The notes under the pieces were generated by a model, which was given only the letters and a program-made list of their open reading frames with translations, was not told the origin of the DNA and did not search any database. The translations under genes and the position numbers were made by a program. This document shows, piece after piece, positions 9,701 through 62,795 of a stretch of DNA of 64,000 bases (the stretch's first letter is position 1; the number at the start of each line of letters is the position of its first letter). Location of the stretch: positions 11,718,001 to 11,782,000 of the forward strand of contig NC_088861.1 of NCBI RefSeq assembly GCF_963853765.1. Direction: 5' to 3'. The stretch is from Magallana gigas (Eukaryota).

Positions 9701-9745
9701 GCATTTTTTTAAATTGTAGAACAAATTTTGTTGTGTTTTTTTTTT

Positions 9746-19685: not shown

Positions 19686-20465
19686 TTACAGGTAAATAAT
19701 TATCAATGGCTTTTTGGGGTTTGATTTCCCTCCTAATGCTTTCCCAAGGCGACCGATAGCTTTTTGGATCTTTTTACCGTTTTTGCCGAATCTGCAAGAA
19801 TTAGAAAGAAATTTTGGAAATGCGCAATGACATTAAACGTTTCTGTCTTTATAAGATGCAAAATACATCCTCCCCTATTAAAAAGAATAAAAGACCGTTA
19901 AACGTAAATATATTATCTACCTTTCAGTAAAAAGTGTAACAACCTCATTACGGCATTGCGGGTTCAATGGCAAAAAGATTCTGCTTCTGGACGATTTGGT
20001 ACTGTCTTTTCGTCGTTGGGATATCTCCGAATCTGTATTAAAAAGTTACAAAGCACCATATCGTTGTAGACCTCTAATATTATATCTCCAATAAAAATTG
20101 CATTTACGCATGGAACTTTTTACTCTTCACGTTATTTTTTACTTGAAGAGTTTTTTCAGCTAGCGATAAACAAAACTACATATGTTTCGATACACTTAGA
20201 GTTTTAAAAAACCACAATGAAATATAGAACTTCTGTTGTCGGTGTGCTTTTATTCTAAAAGGGCATGATCACAATTTTGGTTAAACCTTATTTTTCTATT
20301 TTTATTGTTTAAAATGCTTAAGAAAAGTGTTTCTAATTATCAACAAAACTTTGAGTATCGTAAAACTAGAAGCAAAATAAAGAGCCCAAAATTCGTTGTC
20401 ATATAAACAAGACTCATGCCCTTGTTTTGTTATCATTGTTTCAATAAATCGTTAAAGTTATTTTC

Positions 20466-20551
<86 letters not shown>

Positions 20552-22019
20552 ATTCATTTTAAGCAGAAATAAATAATCCTATTCACTTTAGATCTAAAAC
20601 AAAAAGTTTTGCTTCGAATTTCAAAACGTGAACAAAAACCTTGTTCACATTACAAAATATTATGAGCTCTATATCTCGCTTGTAACACGACGAATTACCC
20701 TCAAAATTTTGGGGGAATATTAGAAATTCCTTACTGAACCATTGGAAACATGCAAATCGGAAACATGATTTTTGACTAAAGTCGTGACTGTGTACTTTAA
20801 AGTAAACAGTTTTAATCTGTATACTTTGCTACATTTAACGTTTTGTTGTTCTGATACAAGGACGAGTTGTATACCATGGATATACTACATAATAATTAAC
20901 ATATAAGCGACCATAAAGCTAAAAGACAATGGTTTTGCACAAATTAAAGTTATTTTTAATGCTATAAACACGGGTTTGCAACTATTTAACGAATTGCTAT
21001 ATCTAGGATGCGATGAACAATGAATTGATATAACGTTTTAAAACTTACTATTTCCACATGCTGTTTTCACGTCCTTTTGTGTACATTGTCCTGTATGCCG
21101 TTTGTAAACTCCGTCTAAACAACAAACAAATAACATTGTAATCTATGGAAATCGTGCAGATGCATATATGTTTAATGATAACATTTATGACTAATTCATT
21201 TGACTATACAGTTACACTTAATACTTGGGATAAGTAACTTTTAACGAATTGAAAAATCTAAATACGACCATGCATTCCCCTTCCTTTTATCGTTAAGATG
21301 GCTTTTTTTAAATTCAAGAATTATATGTCTGACTCAATACATACCTGCACAACAGTCAACTTCCTCATTCTCTTGATATCTTTCGTGAACACCTGAACTT
21401 TTGCAGCAAATATGTGTTCTGTTACGCATAGTCTTTTTGGCAATTTCTAATGTGATAACAAACGATATATATACATTGCTTTAAATGAAAAAANNNNNNN
21501 NNNNNNNNNNNNNNNNNNNNNNNNNNNNNNNNNNNNNNNNNNNNNNNNNNNNNNNNNNNNNNNNNNNNNNNNNNNNNNNNNNNNNNNNNNNNNNNNNNNN
21601 NNNNNNNNNNNNNNNNNNNNNNNNNNNNNNNNNNNNNNNNNNNNNNNNNNNNNNAATCATTTTACCGTTATTTTTTTCAGCTTAAAAACATCTCATTTCG
21701 TTTACGGCAAATAATTGTAAAAGCCGTGCATTTCGTTTCTTACCCCCACAGCAGTCCATTTCCAGGCCTAGCTCAAATCTGTCTCGAACCCCTGCTTTTG
21801 GGCAGCAGATCTGTGTTGCTAGGTTAAACACTGCGTTTGTGATTTTACCATTTTTTTCATATACACACTTGCAATCTACAACTAAAAGGTTATAAAGTTA
21901 TCGTATGTTTACAAGTAGTTCTTACTTGAAATTTTATCCCTTCTTCGAATTCTTTAACCACCTTTAGCAACAGCCGTTTTGCAAAAAAATGCAACAATCA
22001 TCAAATGAAAAATGACCAT
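19686..22019 (-). CDS. Secreted galaxin-like Cys-rich protein, paralog E (6 exons, 193 aa, frame intact)
   Basis: Exons 22019-21962, 21881-21744, 21446-21345, 21114-21049, 20032-19921 and 19791-19686, all with GT-AG boundaries. MVIFHLMIVAFFCKTAVAK|VVDCKCVYEKNGKITNAVFNLATQICCPKAGVRDRFELGLEMDCCG|EIAKKTMRNRTHICCKSSGVHERYQENEEVDCCA|DGVYKRHTGQCTQKDVKTACGN|NSEISQRRKDSTKSSRSRIFLPLNPQCRNEVVTLFTE|RFGKNGKKIQKAIGRLGKALGGKSNPKKPLIIIYL*. An N gap lies within intron 2. Confidence 0.85.
20259..20796. mobile_element. Kolobok-type non-autonomous element (MITE) inside intron 4 of paralog E
   Basis: Left end AAGGGCATGATCACAATTTTGG; imperfect inverted right end CTAAAGTCGTGACTGTGTACT followed by TTAA. The body resembles 56516-56941. 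Confidence 0.55.
20469..20546. repeat. (TC)39 microsatellite
   Basis: Perfect dinucleotide run. Confidence 0.99.
21494..21654. other. Assembly gap (N run)
   Basis: 161 N. Confidence 1.
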
Positions 22020-22869
22020 CTTGAGGAGTGTTGACCTATCAAGTATTACTTCAAGCAAATGGTGCCAAGGCCCTTAGAAATTCACTATGGTCTCATTTCA
22101 GTCCAACATGCCTTTATAAGCTACAAGCTTCATTGAAGTGTCACTAGGGTGTCATCGTGAAATCCCCAGATTTATTTTTAATTTTGTTTCAAATTGCATC
22201 AGATCTTTAACCTTGTGTTATTCTTTCTATGCAACATATGTAACTATGTTTTTGTCAATCTTTAAGTAAATTTAGTTAAAACTGATAATTACGATTCCTG
22301 ACAGAGTGGTTGTTTTAAAAAAAAATCCAGCAAACAGAAGAGTAGATATTATTTCAAAGAGGTCGAAACACATATTCTTTAAAAGTACAAACAAACGTAA
22401 ACCAACGTATATTTCGATAAAATTAAAAACAATATCCACTTACAACAAATATTTGGGATTTAACAAAAGTAGGATTGCTGCTTTTGAAAACAGTTACAAT
22501 ATTTGTATGCGAGTTTGCCACGGACACAATTAAAATCACAAAGATGTGGTGTTCCTTTATTGAAAAAATCGCCGTTTCAACCTATTTTATTTGGCGAAGA
22601 ATGATTTACCTGTTTCTAATATAAACGTGGCGTTCTAGTCTTTTTTGAATGATTTTTCTATTAATTAAAACAAGTTTCACTTTATTGTTTTCAAAATGCG
22701 TTATGTCTTTACTTTTCAATCTACTGCATGTATTAGTATCGCAAAATAATTTATGATTTTTTTAAATATAGAAAAGCAACATTAATAGAATCAAATACAT
22801 TTAAAAGAATTCATATGGAATGATTTGATTGTAAAATTGAAGTATTTCTTTAACATTTCGGTAATTTAA

Positions 22870-23206
22870 AGCAATATGAGCTGTATTGTTTAGAATTTTA
22901 TTTTGCTGCAAAAACCTGCTAGTATGATAAGTCTGCATATAACTTAAACTTTCACGATAAATAAGGTTTGAAAAAATCATTAATTTTTTTCAAAGGAAAT
23001 ACTTCTCTTCTAAGGAATATATTGCAAATCAATTTTTGTACAGGACGACAGTAATTCACTTTTGCACCAAATAAGGCTTCTTAGCGACCTTTTCCACAAA
23101 AATATGGCTAACAGAAATTTAAAAACCATGATTTTTTGTCATTTTAGTAGAAAAGAACATGTTAGTAAAAAAACAATTCAACATAAAAAATGCAGCTCAT
23201 ATTGCT
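22870..23206. mobile_element. Kolobok-type MITE with perfect 14-bp TIRs and TTAA TSD
   Basis: TTAA|AGCAATATGAGCTG ... CAGCTCATATTGCT|TTAA. AG...CT termini with a TTAA target are the Kolobok signature. Confidence 0.85.
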
Positions 23207-24029: not shown

Positions 24030-24420
24030 TTGAATGAAAAAATGATAATAAACCGTGAACCATCTCAAAAATCCAGTAAACAAAATAAAATTCAAAGCAG
24101 AGCAGCACGAACCTCCAATTTGACAGAGGTAGGATTAGGTGCCTAGGAGGAGTGAACATCCTCTGCTGACAGGTCACACCCGTCGTGTGCTCTTTGTCGT
24201 AATCGGGGGAAAAATCGAAAAAGTCCGTAGACAATAAGGTGATTAATTATGGTCTAACAATTAGTATGAAAAACGTCAGAAAGCATGCGACCAAGTGGAA
24301 AATTGTATTTACTGACAAGGTCGTTGTATCGCGCGCGATCGACCATAGAACTTACGGAAAGATGACTTCAAGCGGCGAGACAGTTGATAGTCCTGTTTTA
24401 TCAACGTGTTCGTCAGAAGC
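24030..24420 (-). mobile_element. 3' remnant of a Penelope-like (probably Naiad-type) retroelement
   Basis: The minus strand reads LTNTLIKQDYQLSRRLKSSFRKFYGR..YNDLVSKYNFPLGRMLSDVFHTNC*, followed by the conserved 3' UTR GGGTGTGACCTGTCAGCAGAGGATGTTCACTCCTCCTAGGCACCT. The superfamily label is from memory. Confidence 0.65.
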
Positions 24421-25242: not shown

Positions 25243-26910
25243 ATGAACGACGATATATCAGATGCGGTAAAATATGGCGATTTTGAAGTATTTAGTGGGG
25301 ATAATTATGAAGCCCTCCTGCCAGAATTAAAATTAGAAGGTTTTGATTCTGATTTTGACAATTTTCTATCCGAAATGGTCGTTTCGGACTTCGATATAAC
25401 ACCCAACAGGCATTTGCCGATTTGAAAAAATCCGATGATCCCGGGTTGCCAGCCCCAGAAACGCCAACAAGTACTCGTTTTGCCAAGCTTTCCGACGACG
25501 AAATTAAAGGATTTCAGGAACTCACACAATCAAAGGCTACAAAACAAAGCACCAAATGGGGTTTAAAGATTCTTACACGTACGCTTCTTTTTTTTAAAAA
25601 AGTGAATATTAGTAAGCAGCAATTAAACGCAAACAAAAACAGCCCATATTATGCAGTTACAGTTTTTTCTCAAATAACTGTCAAAACATGGATATCATTG
25701 TGCGTTTTCTATTACAGATTGGCATATTGAAACGTTTGGAGTCCCTCTAGATCTGGCTGAGATTTGCGAGGAGGATCTGGCGAAAAAACTCAGTCGCTTT
25801 TACTGTGAAGCAAAACCCCAAAACCCGAAAAAGGAGCATACCTCTCGAATATCATAAAAATACCATGAAAGCAATCAGAGCCGCCATAAACAGGCATTTA
25901 TCCGACATCGGTCGAAATATAGACATTGTAAACGATAAAGCATTCAAAACTGCAAATAAAAGTTTGACCGGTCTCATGAAGCATAGAATGGTCACTGAAA
26001 CTTCTCGCCCTACAACTCATAAGGAGATCATTCACAAATCAGATTTACAGAAAATTTCTGCTTACCTGGAGAGTGCATATTCTTCTCCAGTCAATCTGCG
26101 ACTTGCAATGTGGTACATCATCGCGATACATTTTGTGTCTCGTGGTCTTGAATTCCATCATCAGCTTCGGGTAGATTCCTTCGATTTCAAAGTTGACGAA
26201 GAAGGCTCCATATATGCTTGTTTAAAGCATGAAACAAAACCAAAAAACTATCAAGGTGGCATTCACAAACTTGGAGCACTGAACAACAAAAGAATGTATG
26301 AAACTGGAAACGAAACTTGTCCTGTGAAGATGTTGAAGTTCTTCTTGTCTAAAACGGACCCAAATGCGTCTCATCTTTTCAATAAATGCGTTAAAGATGC
26401 CATTTCTTACCCGAAAGATTGCAACATATGGTACACAGCCGATCCCATGAAAAAGCGATCATAAGTTAATTTCCTTCCGGATATTTGCAAGGCCGCCGGG
26501 TGCAAACGTTACACAGCTCACTGTCTAAGAGCGACAGCAATTCAGGCCATGAACGACGCTGGATTTGAAGCAAGACACATCATGTACTTCTCCGGGCATC
26601 GCAACGAAGCTTCCATACGTAGCTATTATCGTGAACTGTCTTCTACCCCAAAAAAAGTGCGAGTGCAACTTTATCTACAATAACCACCGCAAGTGTCAAA
26701 ATAAATGATCCATCTGAAGATTCATGTGTAATTTCCGGCCAACAATCACAGAATCTTCAAATCGTTCCCTATAATTCTGAAAATTCCAACTTACCTGTCA
26801 AAAATGAACTAAATTGTTCCACCATGTCCGACTCGAGCATTAAATCTGGAGTTTTGAATAACTCCCGCTTTGAGAACTGTTCCATTACCATCAAGTACAA
26901 TCTCGACTGA
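25243..26910 (+). pseudogene. Crypton tyrosine recombinase (DUF3504/ZMYM-QRICH1-KCTD1-like), two exons, frameshifted
   Basis: Exon 1 25243-25578 (RFAKLSDDEI..SKATKQSTKWGLK), GT-AG intron 25579-25717, exon 2 to TGA 26908-26910. Catalytic set FVSRG, HCLR, SGH, RSYY; C-terminal FENCSITI. Lesions: frameshifts at ~25395, ~25818 and ~26655, and stop 26462-64. Confidence 0.9.
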
Positions 26911-27408: not shown

Positions 27409-30400
27409 TTAATTCAGTTGAAATTGAGTTTTACATGTAATTTAAGCCCCCCCCCCCCCCAAAAAAAGGAGAGATTTCATATAAATGAATGAAAACAGGT
27501 TAGTGAGTACATATATTACCATGAATGATCAAAACATGTACATTCTTTTTTCAACCGCAGTTTTTGAATGTTAAAAACCTTTCTAAATGCTAAAAAAAAA
27601 CGTTGGATATATTTTAGTGTTTAATTATTTGGTAAAATGTTTAAAATCAAGATAAAATATACCGGTGATATCAGCCATCTGTAACGTCTTTTGCCTTGTT
27701 ATTCAATGACAGTATTTTTTAAATTGAATATTGATTACTTTTTTTTTTACATTAATATTCTAAAGAAATTTACACTGGGATGCTAATTTCTAAATTCTCA
27801 AGATTTCATTGCTAAAAACACTGACTAAGTATATTTATGTCAACTTCACAACAGAAGATGCAGTATTAACTATCCATTTCAGTTTATGTATCTCAAACGG
27901 TGGCAGATGTTTTAGATTTAAACTTTGATAGATAAAGCAAGAACAATCTTTTACGATAGTTTAATTTATTTACAAAAAGATATGCCTATTATGTTTCACA
28001 AAACGAGAACAAGTTATTCAAAGACCAGGATATGAATCACATAATTCACCTTATTTTTTGTTGCACCCATGTAAAGCGACTATTAGTCTGCTTTTATTTT
28101 TAGAGACTAATGTTGATCGACGGTTACCCGAACTGGTGATCATATTCAGTGCTACATTAAAAATATGTGAACACTTCCACTGCTTATACACAATCACAAT
28201 CTAATCCTAAACTTGTATGGAAAATGATATCAACTACGTTAGTAAGTTCTGATTTAAAACACTAAATTGAGGCAACTTTAAGTAAGCTTGCTGTAAATAT
28301 ATTTTTTGTTTGCATAAATTTAATAAGAATTGATGTGTTGTGACATCTTTCTATTAAAATCCAAAATACACAAAAGGAAAACTTGTCTCGAAAGACCACC
28401 AGTTTTCTTGAGTTACTCTTGAAGGCAGGGGTGGCTGTACTTAATATTATGTATATAAACTTTATCAAATCTTGGTATTGAGTCACTAGCTTCGGATGAA
28501 ACTCTGTCACCCAGTCTTTACAAATATATGTTTGCCAAAAGTAATGAAAAGCTGACTGAAGAACATAACCTTGCCTTTCAACCACATTGGCAGTAAACAT
28601 TTAGTTACATTTGAATTGACTGAGTCTAACAACATCATCGCTTCGCTCGCCCAGCGTTGAATAACGATCTAACGTTCGAGAATTTCTATTGTTGTCAAGT
28701 CGGTCACTTTTATTTCTTATTTTCATAAAGTTTACTATCATTGACCAATATTAATCATCAATGGCTTTACTTGCTTCGTTTTGCCCGACAAATTTTTTAA
28801 ATATAACTGGTATAACTTTATATGCATGTTTTCACCTCGTGATGGAAAGAAAGAAAGATACCTGTTTGTTTGTTAGAAAATTAAAATCAGATCTACCTTT
28901 CTTCAAAAATTTATTTGTTTAGTGATTAACTATCATAAAAAAAAGAAATGTTCAGTTCATTTTAGCTTTCGAATAAGAATTATAGCATTCCCTACATTTT
29001 TAATTACATTCACAGATTATGGTTCCTTCGATTTCTTACGGAACTTGATCGTAGTTCATAGCTCTGTAGAAACTGACAGTACTGAAACCTACGCGCCCCG
29101 TTTATCGATTGCTCGAAACCTACAGCAACTTTAGGAAAAAAATCACGGACTGCACGAAATAATCATTAGGATGTCAGACTTAAATTCCTATACATGGCGA
29201 TTTGGCTGGTTCTTTTAGCTAAAGTACTGATTTTTATTTTTTTAAAAAGTAATTTACTTAACCATACTTACTTTTTACTAAACTTAATTTTTCTATTAGT
29301 CAAAAAATGTAAATCTAAACAATCAATTGCATTCTTTTATGATTCATGCGGGTAATGAAGATAAAGATCAAAGCAGAAAAAAAAATACATAACCCGCTAA
29401 CGCTTGCTATGTATTTATCTGTAATTACAAAAAAAAAGCATTTTTTTATCTATATAAAAGCTCGTCATCTCAAGGTAATTCATATTGTCTAAAACGGTCA
29501 CGTCCATCAGAACTCCTATTATGTTTATTTACCCACAAATACTTGTGATACATGTATGTAGACTTCAAATGCATGGAAAGACTTTAAAATACATATTGTG
29601 AAAAATATTGAAGAAAAGGTTAAAGTAATTATATAAAATTGTTTTATTACCACTTAAAGGGAATAAAATAGGGTCCTGATTTCCCCCTACTTTTATTTGA
29701 GTGCGCGTTGTAAACTAAATTGTTTAATCTTTGTTTAGACACATCGCGTTGCTTCCCTGTGATAAATATTGCCTCTTTTCTGATCTACGGTAACTTTGTT
29801 ATGGTTAATCTGATTAGTCATAAGGGTGAGTAATGTCCATCGACAATTTGAATTTATCACCTTACAGCAACAACCAAGTTGATTGAGTCATTCATGGCGC
29901 CATATACCAATTGCCCGTTTGAATGTTTATTAAATGCATTGAATCAGAAGGGGGAATTCAGGGTCAAAACCCAAAATACATTTTGTAGCTTGTAAAAGAG
30001 GAATTTAGGTAATTTATTGGACATTTTGAAGATACGCAGATTTTCTAGACTTAACTTTTTGAAAGACCGTGAGCTAGAAACTTTTATTTTCAATATGAAT
30101 GACTCAACGTGTGACGTAAATAGCCTTCTATGATGCACTGGAACTCCCCATGTTGGTATTTCCAGTTACACTTAAAAGTTTAGTAAATAGGTTAAAGAAG
30201 AAGTAAGACATGCAGGTGCAAAAGAGCTGTGTAAAATTACCTTATTAAGACCGTGAGAATATCTTATACCATTTTGAATGTCTTAGAAAATTTTAAAAAA
30301 AAATTAAAAATACATGGCGAACTTGTTAAACTTCCCATTCAAGCTACGTTTTGTTTTGTTTTGTGTGTTCCTTTGGTCAATGATTTTTTTTAAATTTTTA

Positions 30401-30889
30401 ATTTTTAATGCAAATGGGTGCCACCTAAAATATAAGTGATCTATACACGCGTTACAAATATTGTAATAATTGAAATAATGCTCTGTAGTATATGCATTGT
30501 GTGCAAATATACGATACTATGGTAACACATTGCGTTGTGTGCAAATATGCAATTATTAACCATCTAGCAAAATGTTTAACTTATAAATATGATGATGAAC
30601 ACCAAACACATAATCATGTAATTTAGTTTACAAAACGAAGATTATTTGTAAAAATGTGTTTGTGTTTTTCAGCTTTTTTTTTTTTTAGATCAATGTACTT
30701 CTCCGTTGACGAAAGGTTAGCTTTAAAAATATTTTTTTAATGAATTTAAACATAACGGAAAAACAATAGTAAATACAATTTCAATCAATTTTGTTATGTC
30801 CGAATGTTAATTAAATACATGTGATAATTTTTAAAAATAAATGTAGAAATTTTTAATAAGATTACACCACCTAATTTCTTAATATATAT

Positions 30890-31310
30890 GTACTTGTGTG
30901 CTTTTGTATGAACAGTTTCTAAGGCGAGACAAGCTACTGACAAAATAGTTGATAAAACAGGACTATCAAAAGTCTCATTTGAAGTCATCTTTTCATAAGT
31001 TCTATGGTCGATACAACGACCTTGTCAAAAACTATCTTCCAATGGGTCGCTGCTGACTGAAGTTTTGTATACTAATTGTTAAACCATAATTAATCACCTA
31101 ATTGTCTACGCGCTTTTCCGTTTGTTCCCGAATACGATAAAGATCACACGGCGGGTCTGACCGGTCAATAGAGGATGCTTACTCCTCCATGGTACCTGAT
31201 CATACCTCTATCTATTTAGGGCTTCGTTTTGCTCTGCTTTGCTTTGAATTTGTATTTCGTTTTATGGATTTTTGAGATAGTTGACAGTTTGTTATTGTCT
31301 TTTTTTCATT
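30890..31310 (+). mobile_element. 3' remnant of a Penelope/Naiad-like retroelement (copy 1 of the tandem duplication)
   Basis: KLLTK*LIKQDYQKSHLKSSFHKFYGRYNDLV plus the same 3' UTR motif as at 24030-24420. Confidence 0.65.
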
Positions 31311-32043
31311 GTAAGTATGGGGTTATTATGATCCCGCATACCATATATGGTTTTGAAATCCAATTATCATATTTTTAGTGATATTGTTTCGAAGTATTTG
31401 TTTTTATTTATATCACTTTATTAGAAGAGATGTACCAAATTTTTTAAAAATGCTCCAATTTTTTTTCAAGTATGCATTTTTACGAGGTGACACACACACT
31501 GATAATATGTACATGTAATAACTACTTCTTGACCTAATACTTGGTTCCGGGATCAGTTGTAAAAGAATATCTTGGGAACACTATGGGATATTTTTAAAAG
31601 GAATTTTCTTTAAATCAATAAGGGGGCTATAGAATGTCTTAAATCCTTTAGACTCGGTGATTTCGTATGCTAATATTACTTGATCATTGACAAATAAAAT
31701 AAAGATTAACATGACTATAAAGCAACAACACTACATGCATATTGGAAGAAAGAAATGGTAATGCAAGCATTTGGAATTTCAATGGGTGCCACCTAAAATA
31801 TTAGTGATCTATACACGCGTTACAAATATTGTAATAATTGAAATAATGCTCTGTAGTATATGCATTGTGTGCAAATATACGATACTATGGTAACACATTG
31901 CGTTGTGTGCAAATATGAAATTATTAACCATCTAGCAAAATGTTTAACTTATAAATATGATGATGAACACCAAACACATAATCATGTAATTTAGTTTACA
32001 AAACGAAGATTATTTGTAAAAATGTGTTTGTGTTTTTCAGCTT

Positions 32044-32991
32044 CGCGGGGGTGTTAAGGAAGCATATGGGCAATTTAGCGTCTTATTTTGACTGTTATAT
32101 TCAAAATCGTGGAATAAAATAATTATTTTGAATAAGGTCAAAAACTTAATATTGTCCTTTAAAATAGATGTCAGTGCAATAAAATCGGGTAGTACATTAC
32201 TGCCACATTAGTGCATTATCACGTGACAACTATAAATAGCTTACGTATATTCCTTAACATAAAATGAGATAGAACAACACTACCCCGCAGTTTCCAAAAT
32301 AAAATAAACATACCAAGCGAAAGCAAAACATCTCAGTTTAATCAAAACCGCTGCTAGAATCCTATGTTTTTCATTATTAAAAAGTTATTCATCCGGTTCT
32401 TGTAAAACCTTCCCATCTTTTATATAGTTTGCACGAAAAACGGCAAATTGCATCAAAACAACACACAACATGGGATTCTAGCAGCACTTTTCAATTTAAG
32501 CATTGATCAAACTAACGATACGTATAAAATTTCAAGTTCAATATATACGGGGTAGTGTTGTTCTAGTCGGATTTTTATATCGTAAACAACGACAGAGGAA
32601 AGCCTGGCCGAGAAAGAAAAGCAAATTTACATACCTTTTAAAGAATGATTGATAAAACTAACATCTCCCCCAGTATTCTTATGTTCAATTCTCAATAAAT
32701 CACACCACAATACTTTATCAGAGTTCTTAGATTAGTTATATTTTGAATATGTTTACAATGCTTTCCGATCAAATTCACACGACATTCAACTTTTAGTCAT
32801 GACGTCATCAATGTGTAAATCTACGTAATACAAACTAATTTCTGGAAAAAAATTGTCTTCAGTATTTTTCATTTGTTTTTGATCTACGTTTCGTTGCTTA
32901 GATATTTGAATATGTACATAATAATTAAGATTTGTGATTTCATGGAATTACATGCAACTCAGATTCCATATGCTTCCTTAACACCCCCGCG
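32044..32991. mobile_element. 948-bp non-autonomous element with perfect 26-bp TIRs and nested internal inverted repeats, inserted in a poly-T run
   Basis: CGCGGGGGTGTTAAGGAAGCATATGG (32044-32069) pairs with CCATATGCTTCCTTAACACCCCCGCG (32966-32991). The empty site is visible in the duplicate at 30674-30686. Confidence 0.92.
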
Positions 32992-33209
32992 TTTTTTTTT
33001 TTTTTTAGATCAATGTACTTCTCCGTTGACGAAAGGTTAGCTTTAAAAATATTTATTTAATGAATTTAAACATAACGGAAAAACAATAGTAAATACAATT
33101 TCAATCAATTTTGTTATGTCCGAATGTTAATTAAATACATGTGATAATTTTTAAAAATAAATGTAGAAATTTTTAATAAGATTACACCACCTAATTTCTT
33201 AATATATAT

Positions 33210-33630
33210 GTACTTGTGTGCTTTTGTATGAACAGTTTCTAAGGCGAGACAAGCTACTGACAAAATAGTTGATAAAACAGGACTATCAAAAGTCTCATTT
33301 GAAGTCATCTTTTCATAAGTTCTATGGTCGATACAACGACCTTGTCAAAAACTATCTTCCAATGGGTCGCTGCTGACTGAAGTTTTGTATACTAATTGTT
33401 AAACCATAATTAATCACCTAATTGTCTACGCGCTTTTCCGTTTGTTCCCGAATACGATAAAGATCACACGGCGGGTCTGACCGGTCAATAGAGGATGCTT
33501 ACTCCTCCATGGTACCTGATCATACCTCTATCTATTTAGAGCTTCGTTTTGCTCTGCTTTGCTTTGAATTTGTATTTCGTTTTATGGATTTTTGAGATAG
33601 TTGACAGTTTGTTATTGTCTTTTTTTCATT
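33210..33630 (+). mobile_element. 3' remnant of a Penelope/Naiad-like retroelement (copy 2)
   Basis: Duplicate of 30890-31310 at an offset of 2320. Confidence 0.65.
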
Positions 33631-50806: not shown

Positions 50807-50959
50807 NNNNNNNNNNNNNNNNNNNNNNNNNNNNNNNNNNNNNNNNNNNNNNNNNNNNNNNNNNNNNNNNNNNNNNNNNNNNNNNNNNNNNNNNNNNNNN
50901 NNNNNNNNNNNNNNNNNNNNNNNNNNNNNNNNNNNNNNNNNNNNNNNNNNNNNNNNNNN
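50807..50959. other. Assembly gap (N run)
   Basis: 153 N. Confidence 1.
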
Positions 50960-51868
50960 TACAGGCAGTGGGAGCTAGTAGCTAAAATACGTTGTCAGTT
51001 AATGCACTTATGCTGTTGATAAGATCATAATTAAATAATATAATTCAAAAGTTATGACTATACTTATTTATTGTTTTTACTACTTTATGTAATTGATATA
51101 TTCATAAGTTGTATACGTATTCGGAATTGTTGGAATATAAATGGATTGGATTATATCGGATCGACCATACGCATTTAATATTATTACTCGTAATAATTAT
51201 CAAACGAGTGATCTATTCATTTCTCTTTCTCATTGCATTAATTAAAAAAATCCATAATTCTTAATTTTATGCTTTCGACATAAAATATCTACAATGACTC
51301 TATCTGCCAAAGTAATTGTGGGCTGCAAACCATGTCAGCAATCCTATAAAATGATTATATAAATAAAGGCAAAGTAAAACGTTTGTACTTAAATAAAAGA
51401 TAGTATTTTGAATATACAAGGTATTACAAGTTTTTGACAAAGTCTTTTTACAAGGAGATATGAAAAAGTTCAGACAAGGCATAGAAAGTAACGTTTTTTA
51501 TGTGCCTGTGTTATAAACCTAATATTTAAAAACAATCCAGCCAAATGCGATGTATTTATTAACTGTGTATGTCAAAAAACGTATATCGTTCAGAGTTCAC
51601 GAACTTTTCCCCATAAATTTAAAGTTATTTATTGTGACAGCTAAACTGCTTCGTCCGACGCCAAATCTCGTCGCACTCGGGAAATATTAAAGAAAAGTTT
51701 AAAAACTGCCTTCGGGTAATGATTTGATTTTCCACAAAAAAATGTCTTTGAAAAACATTTATTAAAAATGTTCATACTTGAATTTTAAATGTTGATTTTT
51801 ACAACATACTTAAATACAAATAGAAACAACAACGTAAAATGTGTCTTAATATTTTTATTAGCTCCATA

Positions 51869-53162
51869 TCAAACTCTTATAAAAAAGGAGCTGCCACTGA
51901 GTATGGATATTAAAATATGTTTGCTGTTCTTAGATTTCGTTGTCCGTAGTTTCCAGATGCAAAACAAATTTTTAGAGTTGCGTGGATATTTCTTTCTGCA
52001 CTTACGTACACAAATATACCATGATTTTCAAGACAAGTTTGATAAAATTACTTTAAATCTTTTAAAGCTTGGAAATCAGTCTATTGCATATTCAAATTGA
52101 AACATTCATGAAAATATTTACTTTTACCTTTTCTCCAAACTGTTCAACTCTTTCCAACGCTTTTGATGAGTCCGTGGTGAGTAACCTATAGCTGCACCAG
52201 ATTTTATTCTATTCTCGTCCTTCTCAAAAGTTGATTTTCCTTTTAAATGAAAAATAGATGACAAAAGAATTTTTAATTTTTATCATGATGATCCGAAAAA
52301 GAGACTAAAGAGATACTTTTGAAAGCACGATGATTAAATCTAAACAATAATTCGTTTTATTATGTATTCATTTTCGATTTCTTCCTTTAAAATGAAGCAA
52401 TTTAATATTATATACCCATGATATATTCTTGACAAACTTTATTTACTAGTCAATTTTTACTGTATTTAAAAGTTATTTTCTTGTCAAAGGCTAATTTGAA
52501 TGTATAAAATCTAGTGTTTGAAACGACAAGAGTATATAATGCATTATAAAAGGATTACTTACCACACTTACAATCACAGTTTGTTTGCAGGTCCTTTACA
52601 TACACTTGCTCGTTACAACACAACTCTATTTGAGGTTTGTAAATTCCCTCTGAAATCAACAACCAACGACTTCAATTCACATGGGATAACATAACAGAAA
52701 ATAGTTCGACTATAATGTTTTCTTGCATAAGTTTAAAGCAAAAAATCTGTCATATTCTCTCTTTCCCTTTTTCATATTGCAATTTGCTCACGTGAAAAGT
52801 AGTCCGTATATAAACAAAATTTTGAGTTGTTTGAACACTTATTAAATACTTGCCACCACAACAATCAATTTCCATTTCCTCTTGATATCTCGCATGGACA
52901 CCGGATCTCCGGCAACAAATCTGTGTTGTTTGATTAATCTTTGCGCTGGTAATTTGGTCAATCTTTGAATATACACATTCTCCATCTACAACTACATGTA
53001 CATTCCAGGTCAAGCAATCTGCATTTGCAAATAGTGTATTGGTCTAAATTTTCAAAGGTTTTATACGTATGTATAAAACCAGTACATACCTTTTAAATTC
53101 GAAGAGTTTACGACCGTTATAATGAGACGAAAACTTAGCATCAGGAATGTAAATGCCTTCAT
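51869..53162 (-). CDS. Secreted galaxin-like Cys-rich protein, paralog B (5 exons, 178 aa, frame intact)
   Basis: Exons 53162-53090, 52991-52854, 52649-52563, 52239-52128 and 51995-51869; intron 2 is GC-AG. MKAFTFLMLSFRLIITVVNSSNLK|VVDGECVYSKIDQITSAKINQTTQICCRRSGVHARYQEEMEIDCCG|EGIYKPQIELCCNEQVYVKDLQTNCDCKC|GKSTFEKDENRIKSGAAIGYSPRTHQKRWKELNSLEK|RKKYPRNSKNLFCIWKLRTTKSKNSKHILISILSGSSFFIRV*. Confidence 0.87.
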
Positions 53163-56100
53163 ATTCTTCTTGAAAAATATTGATCCCAAGGTCTCTGGAC
53201 TTCTTTGCTCAAGTATCGGGCAGTAATGTATTTGTTTAATATGATATATTAGAGTATATCATAGCATACTCCTTCATATTCGGAATTTCCTTGCATATAT
53301 CAACCCACGGGTTTTATCTTCTTTTGGATAGAACTTGGGATTTGTCATTTTGGATTTTCCGCTATGTTTAATTGGCCACTAATCTGTGTCCGATAAAATG
53401 CATATTGTCAGGTAGTTGTTAATTTTATCATCGTTTGATGGAATGTACATTGGGCAGCAACATTTAATATGTTCATGTACTTTATTAATTTGACTGGTTA
53501 AAATGGACTGAGTCTGTATGATTTCATAATCTTCATATATAAAGATATCAATTTTTTTGTTTTATAATAAAGGATCATATTTAACATTCGAGCAATTGAA
53601 TCGAAGAACGTTTGGACCAACACACGACGACAAAACAACACATATCAAAGCAATGAAACAAGTGGCAATTTTGTTGCAAAGTGTAAGTCAGAATTTTAAT
53701 GATTGTTTTATATTTATTAAAATTCCAATGCTATATTTGTTATGTAATGGTACAGGACATAAAATGTGAAACATATTAGTTTAACAAACAACCAAGAATA
53801 CGCTATAGTGAGGATTAAATATACAGTGCGCAAAAATATGTGAACGGTTCATTCATGAAAGTCCAATCCTACGAAAAAGATATCGTTGAAATCATTAATT
53901 TAAAGAGCATTTATAAAGTATTTGCTTATCATAAATACTGAATGAAAAATTTATAGGACAAACTGTAAATACAAATCTGGCATGATACACTTAAAAAGAA
54001 TGCTGAGGTTATAATTACCTTGACATTTTTTAAAAGTTGAGTGCACTCATTCGATTAACGTTCGTGTGCATTGAAATCCGGTATGTAAAAACGCGTATCA
54101 GCAATTATATATCAATGAGGCTTTAGAACACGATCAAAGCTCGTTTTGAAAACATTTTTTGCCTCACATCGATTAATTTATCATATTTATCTACACTGAT
54201 TAAATTACGAAAAAAAGGGTGGAGTTGGAAAATCTTCTTTAATCACAAGGGATTATAATTATTTAAGAATATATTTAGATGATTGTGAAAAAGAAATAAG
54301 TACCTACAAAACCCTTTTAAGTTTAAATAGGTTATCTTCAAGAAAAACTGCGCCAGTTTGGATTACTTGTAAGCATTCTCTAGATTTCTACCCTCATTCA
54401 TATACTGTCTCAAATGATGAAAAAATCTAGCATTTCAAAAGAAAAATATTTGCGTATTTCTTACGTTTTTTTAAGTTAAAGGTGGAAATAAATTGCAATG
54501 AACAAATTTGAATTGAAAATTTGTTCAGCACATCTATATTTATACTTGATATCCACTAGATCTAAACTATTACCCAAGAAAATATGAAATGAAATTAATT
54601 TTAAAAATTTTCAGCTTTATGATGCAGACGATCACTAACAACATTACACAATTCAAGATCAATGTCCCCTTATCTTGTCAGATAAAAAATGTAATAAAAA
54701 AACCTTTGTTGTTTCTAGTAGGCAAATGGCTTAAATATGCAATTTTAAATTAAACTTCTAGTTAAAACTGTTAAGCTTTAATATGCGGACGATCACTAAC
54801 AATATCACACATTTCAAGATCGATGAATCCTTATCTTGTCAGATAAAAAATGAATTAACCAATTGCCGTTGATATGTCAAATGCATTACTTTGGGTAGCT
54901 GTGGGTATCTACAACATTGACGAAGCCTGCATGTATTCATAACCTTAATGGTGAGTTGATATTTTGATGACACTGCGTACCGAAAACGCCACTGGGCCAT
55001 ATACTGTTAAGTAAGACACTTGTTTGAAATTTAAAGACTTAAATTTATCAATCTTGGTCATACTTTGATAAATAAGAAAAAAAATATTTACTCCACCAAG
55101 AAAGTACCTTTTCCCCATGGTTCTAATAATTAAGGTTACTATTTTAAGCTCCTTCAAGTTGTCTTAAATGTTGCGCGACCTACTGCTGCATTATTTACGT
55201 TTATATATAATGTTACTTATATTTTGAAATGAAATAGAATGTACGCACTACTTGCAATCTGTAAGTCTAACAAACAACACAGATTAGGTTACTTCGAGGA
55301 TTACCCCAGGGCGCAAAACTATGTCAATGATTCATTCATAAAAGTTCGTTACGACAATTCATACCTACATAAAAGGTATCTTTTCAATCATAAATTTAAA
55401 TAGCAATTACAATGCATTGCTCATTACAGTTACTTAATAAAAAGTTTCACATGGCAAACTGAGATTTAAAATCTGGCATTATACATAAATAAAGAACAAT
55501 GTGGTTTACCTTGACATTTTGCAAAGTTAAGTGCATTCGTTTGATTATTTGCTGTGTATATTGGACAAAAGTATCTAAAAAGGCGAATCAAAAGTTGTAT
55601 ATAAACACGATCAAAGTTCCTTTTCAATGCTTCCTTCACATTAAATAGAATATTCTATCATATTATCTGCATTGATTAAATTAGGGCAAAAAAGATGGTA
55701 TTGGACACTTTGTCTTGAATCATAGGGTTTTCTTAAAACTTATATTTGGATGTTTGTACAAAAAGTGAATATCTGTCAAAACCCTTTTAATTTGAAATAA
55801 GTTATCGTCAAGAAAAACTGTGTCAGTGTGGATCACTCATATGCATTCTCCAGATCTATACCTTCATTAATGCACCGGATCAAATGTTAAAAAATCAAGC
55901 ATTCCAAATGAAAAAAAAAAAATGCTTATTCCTTATATATTTTTTTTTGGGGGGGGGGGGGGTAAAGGCAGAAGATAATTTACAATGGACAAATTTCAAT
56001 TGAAAAAAAATCAGCATATCTATATTTATCCTTGATATCCACTAAATCTAAAACAATACCCGTGAAAATATGACATAAATTTTTACGCTTTTTCATGCAG

Positions 56101-56515
56101 ACGATATCTTACAATTTTAAATGTGATTCATGCCTACAGGAATGGTATCTTTTCAATCATGAATTTAAAAAAGGTTGGTAATTTTTTGTTTGTTTTGTTC
56201 TTTCAATAATACGATATCTCAAAAAATGCACAAATTATTTTCGATTGAAAAAAATTATTGATACCATGCATAGAAGATCAAATGGTCTTCTACAGGAAAG
56301 AATTACATTTTTAAGCCAGTATAGAAACTAATCTACACTTTTTAATGCTTAAACTCGAATTGGTTATTCGTTCGGCTGTTAAATATAAGTTTGTCCAAAA
56401 ATCTTTACCCTTGTTTTCGTACAAAATTAATGTCTAACCCATCAATATTAAGACTTACAGATATTTATGAATAAGCTTTTTAAAATCTCTGTATTATATA
56501 ATAATCAAATATTAA

Positions 56516-59810: not shown

Positions 59811-61539
59811 TAATGAGAGACATTTGGACTAAATGCTTGCTAATAAAAAGGTTAGTAGGATTTAGACAGCACAATTCAGGCACGATTAAAACCGTTTTTG
59901 AAAGGGTGGGAGAGACTGATCCAAAATTGTGACAAGCCAAATAAAAAAAATTAAAAGTGGGGTGGGGGCAACTCTCTCTCTTTATACGTATTTTTAAGAC
60001 AAATGTTTCCTGGGGGAAAGCGGGGCCCAGTCGTTAACTCACATATATTGATTTAGAAGTATTTAATTTAGCAGATCAGTAAAAGCATGCGTTCTATATA
60101 AATATTGTTTTATAAAATGAGTAATGCTATATAATTCTTGTGGTTTCCTAAAACTATTCATAGGAAACATTTTCGGTGTAATATTCAAAACAAATCTGTT
60201 TCACATTTTCCTTAAATTCCAAAAACAATTATGGGTCAATAATATTCTTTCCCATAATTAAAAGATATACCCTGTGTCAGATAAGCCAGTAATACTGAAG
60301 TCTTGTGGTTTTTTATGAATGAAGTTTATCCATTTAAAGAGCAGAATAAAAAAAAGATATCCTTTTATATAACCTTAAACTTATCTGTGCTACGAATAAA
60401 GACTCTGAATACCCATTCACCTATATATGTGTCATTTAAATTCTTTTCTGTAGATCTCATTAGTTTAGCTAACGATAAAAATTCTGTATGCATAATCAAA
60501 AAATCAAGACGGTATTTGGAGCAATTCTTTAACGAATTAAAAACATAACAAGCAAATTTGCAACACATTCATTACAACTGTTTATACAAAATTAACAGAC
60601 TGAGTAAAGGCTTTGTTTTTATGCCTGTTAGCAAATATTACGAAATCAATGATGTTATTTTACAGTCAGTGGATGTTTATAGCTAAGAAACATTGTCAGT
60701 TAAGCGTTTATAAAAAAAATACGATGTTGATAAGATCATAATTAAATTAATTAATCTTAACGAATGATTTATTTGATTCTCTTTCTAAATGCATTATAAA
60801 TCCCCAATAATTCTTCATATCATGTCTTAGACAGACTCAAACTTTTTACAATGACTCTATTTGCCATAGTAAATGTAGGCTGCAAACCATATCAGCCATG
60901 CTATAAAATGATTATATAAAAAAAACTAAAACGGTTGTACTTCGCGCAACAAAGTATTCTATCTCATATTTTGAATATCCAAGGTACATGTATCATAATA
61001 TTTTGTAATCTTTACCGACAACGTCCTTTTACCAAGAGTCATGAAGGCGAAGATCCGATTAGACATAGAACGTTAGGTTGTTTAGGTGCGTATTTTATCT
61101 TCCAAATATTTCAAACCTTTCAGCTAATTGTGATGTTTTAAATGTGTTTGTCAAAAACATATATCATTCAGTGTTCACATACTCTTTACCATTATTTAAA
61201 GTTATTCACTGTGTCAGATAAACCGCCTCTTCCAACAACAAATATCAACGTATATTATTGAAACAGCAAAACGTTACATTTACAGAATAACGTATTTTCT
61301 AAAGAAAAGGTAAACAACTACGTTCCGGTAATGATTAGATTTTCCAAATAAAAGTCTTTGAAAAACTTTTATTTTAATTTTTATAGATAGAAAATGTTGA
61401 TTGTTACGATTTAATTAAATACAAACACATAAGCTTGAACAACGTAAAATGAATCTTCATATTTTTTTTGGGCTCATAATCAAACTCTTATAAAAAAGGA
61501 TTTGCCACTAAGTATGGATATTAAGATATGTTTGATGTT

Positions 61540-62795
61540 TTAAGATTTCGTTGTCCGTAACTTCGAGATGCAAAACAAAATTTTAGAGTTGCTTCGATGT
61601 TTCTTTCTGCACCTACAAAAATATATATTGACATGATTTTTAAGACAAATTCATTATGATTACTCTAAATCTTTTACAGCTTTAAAATCAATCTATCGCA
61701 TATTCAAATTGACACATTTATGAAAATTTTTACTTTTACCTTTCTTTCAATCTGTTCAACTCTTTCCAACGGGTATGACGAGTCCGCAGTGAGCCAACTT
61801 TAGGCACACCTGATTTCACTCTGTTCTCGTCCTTCTCAAAATTTGATTTTCCTATAAAATGAAAAATAGAATGACAAATAAAATTAAAATTTTTTAAAAT
61901 GATAATCCGAAAGAAGCCTTAAGAGATATTTTGGAGAGCATAAAGATTAAATGTAAACAATAATTCGTTTTATTTGATATTCATTTTTGTTTTCTTTTTT
62001 TTGAAATGATGCAATTAAATTTTTGGAAATCCCTCAAGATATAATCTCAACAAACTTTATATGCTAGTCCATTTTTACAGTGTTTGAAAGTTATATTTTT
62101 GTCAAATACTAATTAAATGTAGAAAAAACAAAAATATACACTGTTTGAAACGATAAGAGTTATATACTGCATGATAAAAGGATAAACTTACCACACTTGC
62201 AATCACAGTTTGTTTGCATGTCCTTTACGTACACTTGATCGTTGTAACACAATTCTATTTGAAGTTTGTAAATTCCTTCTGAAATCAGCAATCAGCAATT
62301 TCAATTCACATAAGATAAAATTACAACAAAAATATAGTACAAAAATATTTTTTCTTCCATAAGTTAAAAGCCAAAAATCTTTTAAATATTCTATCTTTCC
62401 TTTTTTTCAAATTGCGATTTGCTCACGTGAAAATTATTCCGTATATAGACAAAATTTCGAGTTGTTCAAACATTGTTTTAATACTTGCCACCACAACAAC
62501 CAATTTCCATTTCCTCTCTATATCTCGCATGGACACCTGACCGACAACAAATCTGTGTTGTTTTATTAAACTTTGCGTTGAGAATTTGGTCAATCTTCGA
62601 GTACACACATTCATCGCCTACAACTGCAAATACATTCCAGTTCAAGCAATTTCCATTTGCAAATTAAGTGTATTGGTCGAAATTTTCAAAGGTTTTCATA
62701 CGTATTTATATATCTGTATAACCTCTTAAATTCGTAGAGTTTGCAATCGTTATTATGAGAAAAAAACATAACATCCAGGGTGTAAGTGCCTTCAT
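61540..62795 (-). CDS. Secreted galaxin-like Cys-rich protein, paralog A (5 exons; last exon ends 20 codons early; possibly pseudogenising)
   Basis: Exons 62795-62723, 62623-62489, 62278-62192, 61851-61740 and 61612(or 61606)-61540; intron 2 is GC-AG. MKALTPWMLCFFLIITIANSTNLR|VVGDECVYSKIDQILNAKFNKTTQICCRSGVHARYREEMEIGCCG|EGIYKLQIELCYNDQVYVKDMQTNCDCKC|GKSNFEKDENRVKSGVPKVGSLRTRHTRWKELNRLKE|RCRKKHRSNSKILFCISKLRTTKS*. The frame continues to the paralogous TGA at 61482-61480. Confidence 0.82.

What the first reader, a model, noticed from the sequence alone, without database searches (positions are those of the whole stretch)
19686..62795. Hidden tandem family of small secreted galaxin-repeat proteins (at least 5 paralogs over 43 kb)
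Seen: five minus-strand gene models share one architecture. It runs signal-peptide exon (phase 1), a 138-nt exon (135 in A) with C..TQICC...GV..R......CCG, a short GxY..C exon, a 112/109-nt linker exon ending in phase 2, and a basic last exon. Three (E, C, B) have intact frames with valid splice sites, and the ORF track misses nearly all of it. Known: dicysteine CC repeats of this spacing characterise galaxins (coral skeletal matrix protein; a squid galaxin has been linked to antimicrobial symbiont selection), which normally carry many repeats. Inference: this is a lineage-expanded, miniaturised galaxin-like family with only 1.5-2.5 repeats fused to a different C-terminus, a candidate shell-matrix or mucosal defence system in a bivalve.
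Basis: partly seen in the sequence, partly recalled or inferred. Interest (0 to 1): 0.85.

Follow-up and report, generated by a model that had tools for sequence, protein, structure and literature searches.

The report
Oyster array of cationic mini-galaxin genes
The window holds four real genes and one relic of an oyster-only family of small, secreted, strongly basic proteins built from one to two and a half galaxin-type cysteine repeats. They are part of an array of about 46 copies that is already in public annotation as "uncharacterized" and whose function has not been tested.

Summary
The observation largely holds. Four minus-strand genes (E, C, B, A) share one architecture: a signal exon, a 132-138-nt di-cysteine exon, a GxY..CC exon, a 109/112-nt exon and a basic tail exon. 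"D" is only a 3' relic with a stop codon.

- **Splicing evidence.** RNA-library contigs show three B-type splice junctions and a poly(A) end. cDNA-like contigs from relatives map exon by exon on E.
- **Corrections.** Exon 3 is 66-87 nt. A and B use GC-AG introns. Window B has AA at its last acceptor, where 14 paralogs have AG. Window A has a premature TAA. The RNA contigs fit other B paralogs better than the window's copy.
- **Gaps.** All three assembly gaps lie outside the exons as modelled.
- **Galaxin reading.** Pfam Galaxin_repeat is the only meaningful hit (21-28 bits for window types, 60-78 bits for Saccostrea relatives). Fold searches rank galaxins first.
- **Family size.** There are 46 copies in 635 kb of one chromosome, mostly an F-C-B-A block repeated about eight times. 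All named relatives come from oysters.
- **Not hidden.** RefSeq and UniProt already model these genes as uncharacterized proteins.
- **Function.** This part is inferred. The proteins are cationic (net +13 to +17) mini-galaxins, most likely a defence or surface-binding repertoire like the squid galaxins. A shell-matrix role is the main rival.

The parts
19686..22019 (-). Gene E, 6 coding exons, 193 aa, intact. Exons: 22019-21962 (signal, phase 1), 21881-21744 (138 nt, CC exon), 21446-21345 (102 nt, second CC exon, phase 1-1), 21114-21049 (66 nt, GVY..C), 20032-19921 (112 nt, ends in phase 2), 19791-19686 (basic tail plus stop). All introns are GT-AG. The assembly gap 21494-21654 lies in intron 2.
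   Evidence: cDNA-like contigs L051 and L052 from relatives map exon by exon and join exon 2 directly to the second CC exon.
37757..37926 (-). Relic 'D'. It holds remnants of a C-type exon 4, intron 4 and exon 5, with an in-frame stop. No exons 1-3 were detected. The gap 39163-39329 lies upstream.
   Evidence: tblastn with P0047. blastn against gene C gives 87.5% and 78.7% identity over 48 and 61 nt, with nothing else found.
44754..46863 (-). Gene C, 5 exons, 167 or 169 aa, intact. Exons: 46863-46788, 46689 (or 46695)-46558, 46286-46203, 45084-44976 (109 nt), 44858-44754. All introns are GT-AG.
   Evidence: The protein is at least 95% identical to the public models P0047, P0007 and P0050.
51839..53162 (-). 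Gene B, 5 exons, 180 aa by the paralog-type junctions. Exons: 53162-53090, 52991-52854 (138 nt, GC donor), 52649-52563 (87 nt), 52239-52128 (112 nt), 52001-51869. The 3' UTR runs to about 51839, after AATAAA at 51859. The last acceptor reads AA at 52003-52002 in this copy. An alternative AG lies at 51997-51996.
   Evidence: Junctions and the poly(A) end come from read laying.
61480..62795 (-). Gene A, 5 exons. Exons: 62795-62723, 62623-62489 (135 nt, GC donor), 62278-62192, 61851-61740, 61612-61480. A premature TAA at 61542-61540 removes the last 19 residues.
   Evidence: The other A-type copies examined have Lys at that codon.
21494..21654 (.). Assembly gap inside intron 2 of gene E. It does not touch the coding frame as modelled.
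50807..50959 (.). Assembly gap in the spacer between genes C and B.

Best explanation
The region is a slice of a large tandem array of 'mini-galaxin' genes that is known only from oysters.

**Gene product.** Each gene encodes a protein of about 165-195 residues with four parts:
- an N-terminal signal peptide;
- a disulfide-rich beta-hairpin module made of 1.5-2.5 galaxin-type di-cysteine repeats;
- a decayed further repeat;
- a conserved, strongly basic, predicted-helical tail that ends in a short hydrophobic stretch.

**How the array grew.** It grew by repeated duplication of a multi-gene block (F-C-B-A). The phase 1-1 exons also allowed repeat exons to be duplicated inside genes, as in E.

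**What is shown.** The genes, their splicing at subfamily level, the galaxin-type repeat and fold, the copy number, the restriction of all named relatives to oysters, and the lesions in window copies A, B and D.

**What is inferred.** The proteins are secreted. They probably act as a diversified set of cationic surface-binding effectors, in which the rigid galaxin module carries a polycationic tail that binds anionic surfaces. The most likely targets are microbial envelopes at mucosal surfaces or in haemolymph, as proposed for squid galaxins. I put about 0.4 on this defence role.
For: **Genes and splicing**
- The exons are conserved and the models have matching phases.
- Spliced contigs and a poly(A) end were found in RNA libraries.
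- cDNA-like contigs with uninterrupted E-type reading frames map exon by exon on gene E.
- The RefSeq protein P0043 is identical to my translation of paralog L014.

**Galaxin identity**
- Pfam Galaxin_repeat scores 21.2-27.8 bits for A- and C-type proteins, and 28.7-78.5 bits for other family members.
- BLASTP of the C-type against the Saccostrea galaxin-like protein gives E = 5e-21.
- The AlphaFold model has pLDDT 85-91 over residues 31-80 of the hairpin stack (strands 25-89).
- Galaxins top both AFDB fold searches.

**Expansion**
- 59 exon matches were found, 58 of them within C9:11.655-12.290 Mb.
- The types form clades of 7-8 near-identical copies, in the recurring order F-C-B-A.
- All ten named representatives are Ostreidae. 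Only 34 hits were found among 1.84 billion representative proteins.

**Features that fit an effector**
- Net charge is +13 to +17 and pI is 9.2-9.5. The tails carry +9 to +12, and the hydrophobic moment reaches 0.77 in E.
- dN/dS among paralogs is 0.55 (B) and 0.88 (A), with occasional pseudogenes.
- Squid galaxins are cationic, have a beta-helical plus an alpha-helical part, are expanded to ten genes, and yield antibacterial peptides (PMC12773714).
Against: - There is no tissue, induction or protein-level evidence.
- The poly(A) raw-read run sampled gave only 7 reads and no exon pattern.
- Window-type proteins fall just below Pfam's gathering score, and E-type proteins give no Pfam hit at all.
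- The amphipathicity of the tail is high only in E; it is 0.30 in C.
- The conserved residue before the tail is a single Arg (mostly E-R), not a classical dibasic cleavage site.
- Basic, fast-evolving, tandemly arrayed small proteins are also typical of shell matrix families. A small bivalve galaxin-like protein, cysrichin, is a shell matrix protein (PMC10045328).
- Signal peptides were judged only by hydrophobicity and by the model's N-terminal helix.
- Some near-identical copies (up to 98.6%) could be assembly duplicates.
Confidence: 0.7

Rival explanations
1. The proteins are shell or larval-shell matrix proteins. They would be secreted by the mantle, and their basic tail and Cys-rich module would bind the acidic matrix, chitin or mineral and modulate calcium carbonate deposition, like coral galaxin and the mussel protein cysrichin.
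For: - Galaxin is a coral skeletal matrix protein with di-Cys repeats (PMC2726143).
- Cysrichin is a 17.5-kDa, pI 8.15, galaxin-like bivalve matrix protein expressed in mantle and gill (PMC10045328).
- The family is secreted, Cys-rich, basic and tandemly expanded.
Against: - No shell-proteome or mantle evidence was found for these loci.
- Coral galaxins are acidic (pI about 4.5), whereas these proteins have pI 9.2-9.5.
- High copy number with relaxed or diversifying evolution fits host-microbe interfaces at least as well.
Confidence: 0.25
2. The array is mostly decaying or non-functional DNA. On this reading, a recently amplified segment carries gene copies that are transcribed at a low level but are largely pseudogenes, and its copy number is inflated by assembly of haplotypes.
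For: - In the window, A has a premature stop, B has a mutated acceptor and D is a relic.
- dN/dS is 0.55-0.88.
- Copies are up to 98.6% identical including introns.
- Three assembly gaps lie in the region.
- There were very few reads in the sampled poly(A) run.
Against: - All 8 B-type copies and 5 of the 7 A-type copies whose coding sequence was translated keep full reading frames with conserved cysteines.
- C and E are intact in the window.
- Spliced, polyadenylated transcripts exist.
- The architecture, including the tail, is conserved in Crassostrea virginica, Saccostrea and Ostrea.
- C. angulata and older M. gigas annotations each list several distinct loci.
Confidence: 0.1
3. The proteins have another extracellular role, unrelated to defence or shell. 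Examples are gamete recognition, larval settlement or adhesive cement, or mucus structuring.
For: Fast-evolving, lineage-restricted, tandemly duplicated secreted Cys-rich proteins also occur in these systems. A conserved N-glycosylation sequon lies just before the first CC in A, B and C.
Against: No specific evidence points this way. It rests only on the absence of expression data.
Confidence: 0.15

Closest known systems
Scleractinian galaxin (Galaxea fascicularis, Acropora millepora; Pfam PF24748 Galaxin_repeat)
   Same: Both have a signal peptide and tandem units of about 30 residues with two di-Cys motifs. Both have a predicted beta-hairpin stack. Galaxins are the best structural matches and Galaxin_repeat is the only meaningful Pfam family.
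   Different: Coral galaxins are about 300-340 residues long, consist almost wholly of repeats, and are acidic (pI about 4.5). The oyster proteins have 1.5-2.5 repeats, pI 9.2-9.5, and a conserved basic helical tail with a hydrophobic end. The window types score below Pfam's gathering threshold.
Squid galaxins EsGal1-10 (Euprymna scolopes)
   Same: Both are molluscan, cationic and expanded in their lineage. Both have a predicted beta-helical part plus an alpha-helical part (PMC12773714). For the oyster proteins.
   Different: EsGal proteins have more repeats (up to 7) and ten genes. The oyster family has about 46 genes with fewer repeats. Antibacterial activity is shown only for EsGal partial peptides and nothing has been tested for the oyster proteins. 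Sequence relatedness beyond the shared repeat was not tested here.
Cysrichin (Hyriopsis cumingii shell matrix protein)
   Same: It is a small (17.5 kDa), basic (pI 8.15), secreted bivalve protein with galaxin-like di-Cys repeats, expressed in mantle and gill (PMC10045328).
   Different: It has five regular repeats, and no basic or hydrophobic tail is described for it. It is a single characterised gene with a vaterite-inducing role. It did not appear among the profile hits.
RefSeq/UniProt models of the same family (e.g. LOC105346141, LOC117690673, LOC128186309; A0A8W8JFJ0; K1RTS4)
   Same: These are the same genes or near-identical paralogs with the same exon structure. P0043 equals the translation of paralog L014.
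   Different: They are named only 'uncharacterized protein'. No paper in the searchable library mentions them. The array structure and family definition are not described.

Membership tests
Galaxin-like repeat proteins (Pfam PF24748) | The protein's own score against the Pfam Galaxin_repeat model reaches the gathering threshold (28 bits). | tested here: inconclusive
   C-type proteins score 26.1-27.8 bits (E 3e-6 to 9e-6). A-type proteins score 21.2-21.8 bits (E 2e-4 to 3e-4). E-type proteins give no hit. A precomputed PF24748.2 is listed for P0007 and P0050.
Galaxin-like repeat proteins (Pfam PF24748) | Clear homology to proteins that do pass the model. | tested here: met
   C-type P0050 against Saccostrea 'galaxin-like' P0032 gives E = 5e-21 over 137 residues. 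P0032 scores 60.2 bits and P0052 scores 78.5 bits. All were retrieved by the exon-2 profile.
Galaxin-like repeat proteins (Pfam PF24748) | Tandem units carrying paired di-cysteine (CC) motifs at regular spacing. | tested here: met
   B has three CC motifs plus C.C.C. C has four CC motifs. E has four CC motifs across two CC exons. This is only 1.5-2.5 units, against about ten in coral galaxin.
Galaxin-like repeat proteins (Pfam PF24748) | A beta-hairpin stack fold like that of predicted galaxin structures. | tested here: met
   The model has nine strands over residues 25-89 and pLDDT 85-91 over residues 31-80. The top Swiss-Prot AFDB hits are Galaxin and Galaxin-2 (probability 0.93 and 0.75). 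In the AFDB clusters, 14 of the top 30 hits are named galaxin or galaxin-like. E-values are weak (3e-3 to 0.2). No solved structure exists for comparison.
Galaxin-like repeat proteins (Pfam PF24748) | An N-terminal signal peptide, meaning the protein is extracellular. | tested here: met
   This is a heuristic judgement only. There is a hydrophobic N-terminal stretch (Kyte-Doolittle 2.2-2.9 over 11 residues), a model helix at residues 3-18, and a conserved N-x-T sequon. No dedicated signal-peptide predictor was available.
Scleractinian skeletal galaxin in the strict sense | An acidic mature protein (pI about 4.5) made almost wholly of repeats and occluded in the skeleton. | tested here: not met
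   pI is 9.2-9.5 and net charge is +13 to +17, and about half of the protein is not repeat. For the coral values see PMC2726143. Occlusion in shell is not testable here.
Antimicrobial galaxins (squid EsGal type) | Expression at microbe-facing epithelia and antibacterial activity of the protein or its peptides. | not testable with these tools
   Only the shared physico-chemical features were checked: cationic charge and a beta module plus a helix.

The most novel reading that the evidence does not exclude
Oysters carry an array of about 46 genes encoding cationic mini-galaxins, restricted to their lineage, that serves as a diversified antimicrobial or microbiome-shaping effector repertoire. In this reading the conserved basic, hydrophobic C-terminal tail is the membrane-active part and the galaxin hairpin module is a stable carrier or recognition part. 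It would be a bivalve counterpart of the squid EsGal system, generated by block duplication and exon duplication.
Probability: 0.3. Interest if true: 0.7.

Novelty: new variant of a known kind. Interest (0 to 1): 0.5.

Why it matters
Galaxins are best known as coral skeleton proteins. More recently they have been proposed as antimicrobial factors that shape squid symbioses. This work points to a compact, strongly cationic variant that is amplified to dozens of copies in commercially important oysters. These animals suffer mass mortalities from Vibrio and OsHV-1. The family is therefore a concrete, testable candidate for either innate defence or shell formation, and a clean example of family growth by block duplication with symmetrical-phase exons. 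The genes are already in public annotation but are unnamed and undescribed, so defining the family and its array has practical value for interpreting oyster transcriptomes.

Tried and rejected
- **Pfam on single exon peptides.** This gave nothing, even at E <= 10. The repeat is only recognised in spliced proteins.
tblastn, blastn and three-frame reading on both sides of gap 39163-39329 found only a relic of exons 4-5.
- **A short 44-nt exon 3 ending after ..CCNEQ.** Rejected for B, because the RNA junction uses the donor 43 nt further downstream.
- **A GT donor 3 nt upstream of the GC donor in B.** Rejected, because the junction contig shows CT..GC ends.
- **GPI anchor or transmembrane tail.** The terminal hydrophobic stretch is only 7-8 residues in C and E, so this is unlikely as a family feature.
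- **Classical dibasic propeptide cleavage before the tail.** The conserved residue is a single Arg, so this is not supported.
- **PDB sequence and fold searches.** No relative was found.
- **ESM Atlas.** No usable hit.
- **Word-indexed protein searches.** These added only near-identical models and one longer Saccostrea protein.
- **Literature searches.** Searches by locus, accession and run identifiers found nothing.
- **Earlier notes of this scan.** Nothing on this family.
- **Fetching the whole 660-kb cluster.** This failed. Typing of copies therefore rests on 30 loci of 3.1 kb.
- **Raw poly(A) reads (X21).** Only 7 reads, all in one orientation and not exon-shaped. They are uninformative.

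Full report

A six-frame scan for CC..CC peptides and tblastn with the exon peptides find one conserved Cys-rich exon of about 46 residues. Its motif is C-V-Y .. T-Q-I-C-C .. G-V-H-x-R-Y .. D-C-C-G. It lies on the minus strand at four places in the window, and a second, partial copy lies next to the first one. Copies match each other at E = 1e-11 to 1e-29, so this is not chance. tblastx also picks up the following GxY..CC exon between copies C and B. Copies A and B are recent duplicates, 76% identical over 2.4 kb including introns. The window's three N runs are at 21494-21654, 39163-39329 and 50807-50959.

**2. Gene models**

I used public proteins found by the profile search as guides and read the splice sites directly.

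| Gene | Coding exons (minus strand) | Product | State |
|---|---|---|---|
| E | 22019-21962, 21881-21744, 21446-21345, 21114-21049, 20032-19921, 19791-19686 | 193 aa | intact, all GT-AG |
| C | 46863-46788, 46689/46695-46558, 46286-46203, 45084-44976, 44858-44754 | 167/169 aa | intact, all GT-AG |
| B | 53162-53090, 52991-52854, 52649-52563, 52239-52128, 52001-51869 | 180 aa | last acceptor reads AA |
| A | 62795-62723, 62623-62489, 62278-62192, 61851-61740, 61612-61480 | truncated | premature TAA |

- The signal exon ends in phase 1.
- The Cys-rich exons are all phase 1-1.

- Intron 2 of A and B is a GC-AG intron (donor GCAAGT).
- Exon 3 is 87 nt in A and B, 84 nt in C and 66 nt in E.
- All four genes have two acceptors 6 nt apart before exon 2 (..AG TTGTAG). 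Public models use both, giving forms with or without Val-Val.
- 'D' is only a remnant of a C-type exon 4, intron 4 and exon 5 at 37757-37926, with an in-frame stop. Nothing resembling exons 1-3 lies on either side of gap 39163-39329. Whether they sit in the gap cannot be known.

**3. RNA evidence**

Runs holding 11-17% of the words of a 3-kb stretch around B were found. This share fits the exons only. Laying four runs on 51000-54000 gave contigs from RNA or probable RNA libraries with these features:
- joints 52854|52649, with ends CT..GC, which is GC..AG on the gene strand;
- joints 52128|52001;
- a contig ending in a T-run at 51839, which is a poly(A) tail on the gene strand, 20 nt after AATAAA at 51859.

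The last junction is non-canonical on the window's own sequence. The acceptor reads AA at 52003-52002, whereas all 14 other A/B-type copies examined read AG.

At most sites where the contigs differ from the window, they carry the letter shared by the other B-type paralogs. The contigs therefore prove the splicing pattern of the B subfamily, not expression of this particular copy. Window B could still use an AG 6 nt downstream, which keeps the frame.

The exon 1-exon 2 junction of B was not seen. One contig reads through intron 1, and another ends exactly at the exon-1 donor.

For E, two cDNA-like Logan contigs from relatives (L051, L052) carry uninterrupted reading frames of 197 and 191 residues. 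They map exon by exon on the window's E gene at 74-86% identity across the coding exons, with boundaries that match my model. This includes a direct join of exon 2 to the second CC exon. In addition, the RefSeq protein P0043 is letter-for-letter the translation of paralog L014 under the same exon structure.

**4. The assembly gaps**

- Gap 21494-21654 lies within intron 2 of E. The donor after exon 2 and the acceptor before the second CC exon are both present outside the gap and both are in phase 1. In this genome's other E-type copies, the matches to the two exons lie about 180-260 nt apart, against about 290 nt here.
- Gap 50807-50959 is intergenic.
- Gap 39163-39329 lies upstream of the D relic.

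I did not look up or fill any gap letters.

**5. What the proteins are**

- *Pfam on exon peptides.* Single exon peptides hit nothing.
- *Pfam on spliced proteins.* These hit one meaningful family, PF24748 Galaxin_repeat. C-type scores 26.1-27.8 bits against a cut-off of 28. A-type scores about 21-22 bits. Other family members score 28.7-30.4 bits. Two Saccostrea proteins that NCBI names 'galaxin-like' score 60 and 78 bits. E-type proteins give no hit.
- *Direct homology.* The C-type protein aligns with the 60-bit Saccostrea protein at E = 5e-21 over 137 residues. In that alignment the 109-nt 'linker' exon lies over a regular third repeat (CCG-x-x-T-Y-S-P .. CC). The linker is therefore a decayed galaxin repeat and not foreign sequence.
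- *Predicted structure.* An AlphaFold model of the C-type protein (mean pLDDT 70) has a beta-hairpin stack over residues 25-89, with pLDDT 85-91 over residues 31-80, followed by helices that include one long helix at 121-154.
- *Fold search.* Among 550,129 Swiss-Prot models the two best matches are Acropora Galaxin and Galaxin-2. Among 2.3 million AFDB fold clusters, 14 of the top 30 hits are named galaxin or 'Galaxin-like repeats' proteins. E-values are weak but the ranking is consistent.
- *Solved structures.* Nothing in the PDB resembles the protein by sequence or fold.
- *Physical chemistry.* The proteins are strongly basic: net charge +13 to +17 and pI 9.2-9.5. The last exon alone carries +9 to +12 and ends in a short hydrophobic stretch.
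- *Conservation of the tail.* The tail follows a nearly invariant Arg, encoded across the last exon junction. It is conserved in Crassostrea virginica, Saccostrea and Ostrea relatives.

**6. Size and shape of the family**

The exon-2 profile finds 59 matches in the window's own genome, and 58 of them lie on one contig between 11.655 and 12.290 Mb.
- 46 are full exon-2 copies: 36 on the minus strand and then 10 on the plus strand.
- 12 are second, partial repeat exons.
- One weak match lies on another contig.

Typing the 30 fetched loci gives eight B (window B among them), seven A (window A among them), eight C, two E, four F and one G. The coordinates show the order F-C-B-A recurring about eight times. 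The window holds E, the D relic, C, B and A.

B-type loci are 92-98.6% identical over 3.1 kb including introns. All eight B-type coding sequences are open. Five of the seven A-type coding sequences translated are open; the exceptions are window A (stop codon) and L023 (frameshift). Mean dN/dS is 0.55 for B and 0.88 for A.

A tree on only 46 columns puts each type in its own clade and leaves C. virginica, Saccostrea and Ostrea outside those clades (resolution is low). This fits block duplication within the Magallana lineage.

In 1.84 billion representative proteins the profile finds only 34 hits, and every named one is an oyster. The contig length, 50,364,239, equals that of a Magallana gigas RefSeq record carrying a family member.

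**7. Is it hidden or novel?**

It is not hidden. RefSeq and UniProt have spliced models for M. gigas and C. angulata, named 'uncharacterized protein', and PF24748 is precomputed on some of them. No paper in the searchable library mentions these loci, accessions or runs. Searches for galaxin together with oyster or Crassostrea return only work on corals, squid, mussels and other bivalves.

What is new here is the definition of the family:
- its mini-galaxin architecture with a conserved cationic tail;
- the block-duplicated array of about 46 copies;
- the restriction of every named relative to oysters.

**8. How it most likely works**

*Shown.* These are secretory-type, disulfide-rich, cationic small proteins encoded by a rapidly duplicating array, and they are transcribed and spliced.

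*Inferred.* The galaxin hairpin stack gives a protease-resistant scaffold, and the polycationic helical tail binds anionic surfaces.

By analogy with the squid galaxins, I favour a defence or microbe-management role, at about 0.4. The squid proteins are cationic, have a beta-helical plus an alpha-helical part, are expanded to ten genes, and yield antibacterial partial peptides (PMC12773714).

The main rival is a shell-matrix role, at about 0.25. Coral galaxin and the small basic mussel protein cysrichin, which is expressed in mantle and gill, are the models for it. Mussel 'galaxin' transcripts are among the genes modulated in gills after Vibrio infection, which is only loosely relevant (PMC7772429).

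Nothing here distinguishes these roles. Tissue-resolved expression and proteomics would.

**9. Verdict**

The family is about ten times larger than stated. It is already modelled in public annotation, and two of the four window genes carry lesions in this assembly. It is a new variant of a known kind, of moderate interest.

Noticed in passing
window 3307-12022 (+): An LTR retrotransposon. Direct repeats at 3307-3924 and 11406-12022 are 97.4% identical. They flank reading frames with gag/zinc-knuckle, reverse transcriptase, RNase H and integrase domains, split over several frames. I only described it.
   Followed up: partly
window 30413-34102, 24033-24420: A near-identical (99%) tandem duplication (30413-30675 against 31781-32043, and 30674-31782 against 32994-34102). 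Inverted copies of about 390 nt, 78% identical, lie at 24033-24420 against 30933-31310 and 33253-33630. It is probably a repeat element lying between genes E and D.
   Followed up: no
window 25805-26464 (+): An open frame of 219 codons with a DUF3504 domain (E = 3e-8). Its nature was not examined.
   Followed up: no
window 52852-52853 and 62487-62488 (-): Intron 2 of genes A and B uses a GC donor (GCAAGT). An RNA-library contig confirms this for the B type. C and E have GT at the same place.
   Followed up: yes
window, just upstream of exon 2 in all four genes (62623, 52991, 46695, 21881): Two acceptor sites lie 6 nt apart (..AG|TTGTAG|). Public protein models exist with and without the resulting Val-Val right after the signal peptide.
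   Followed up: partly
window 30241-30282 and 17455-17538 (-): The older UniProt model K1RTS4 (P0001) has N- and C-terminal parts that match these places, far outside gene E as modelled here. This is either an alternative or chimeric old gene model, or further exons.
   Followed up: no
window 51202-51605 and 53525-53827: The few raw poly(A) RNA reads of run X21 lie outside the B exons and all share one orientation. This could be low-level transcription of unknown origin, or reads from paralogous spacers.
   Followed up: no
G000:C9:12217406-12289859 (+): Ten further exon-2 copies lie on the opposite strand at the far end of the array. Several are only about 1.7 kb apart. This is a differently organised sub-cluster (type G, L025).
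   Followed up: partly
P0052 (Saccostrea cucullata, 314 aa): This 'galaxin-like' model contains two complete mini-galaxin modules in a row. The second has its own basic tail. It is either a true two-module protein or a read-through of neighbouring genes.
   Followed up: no
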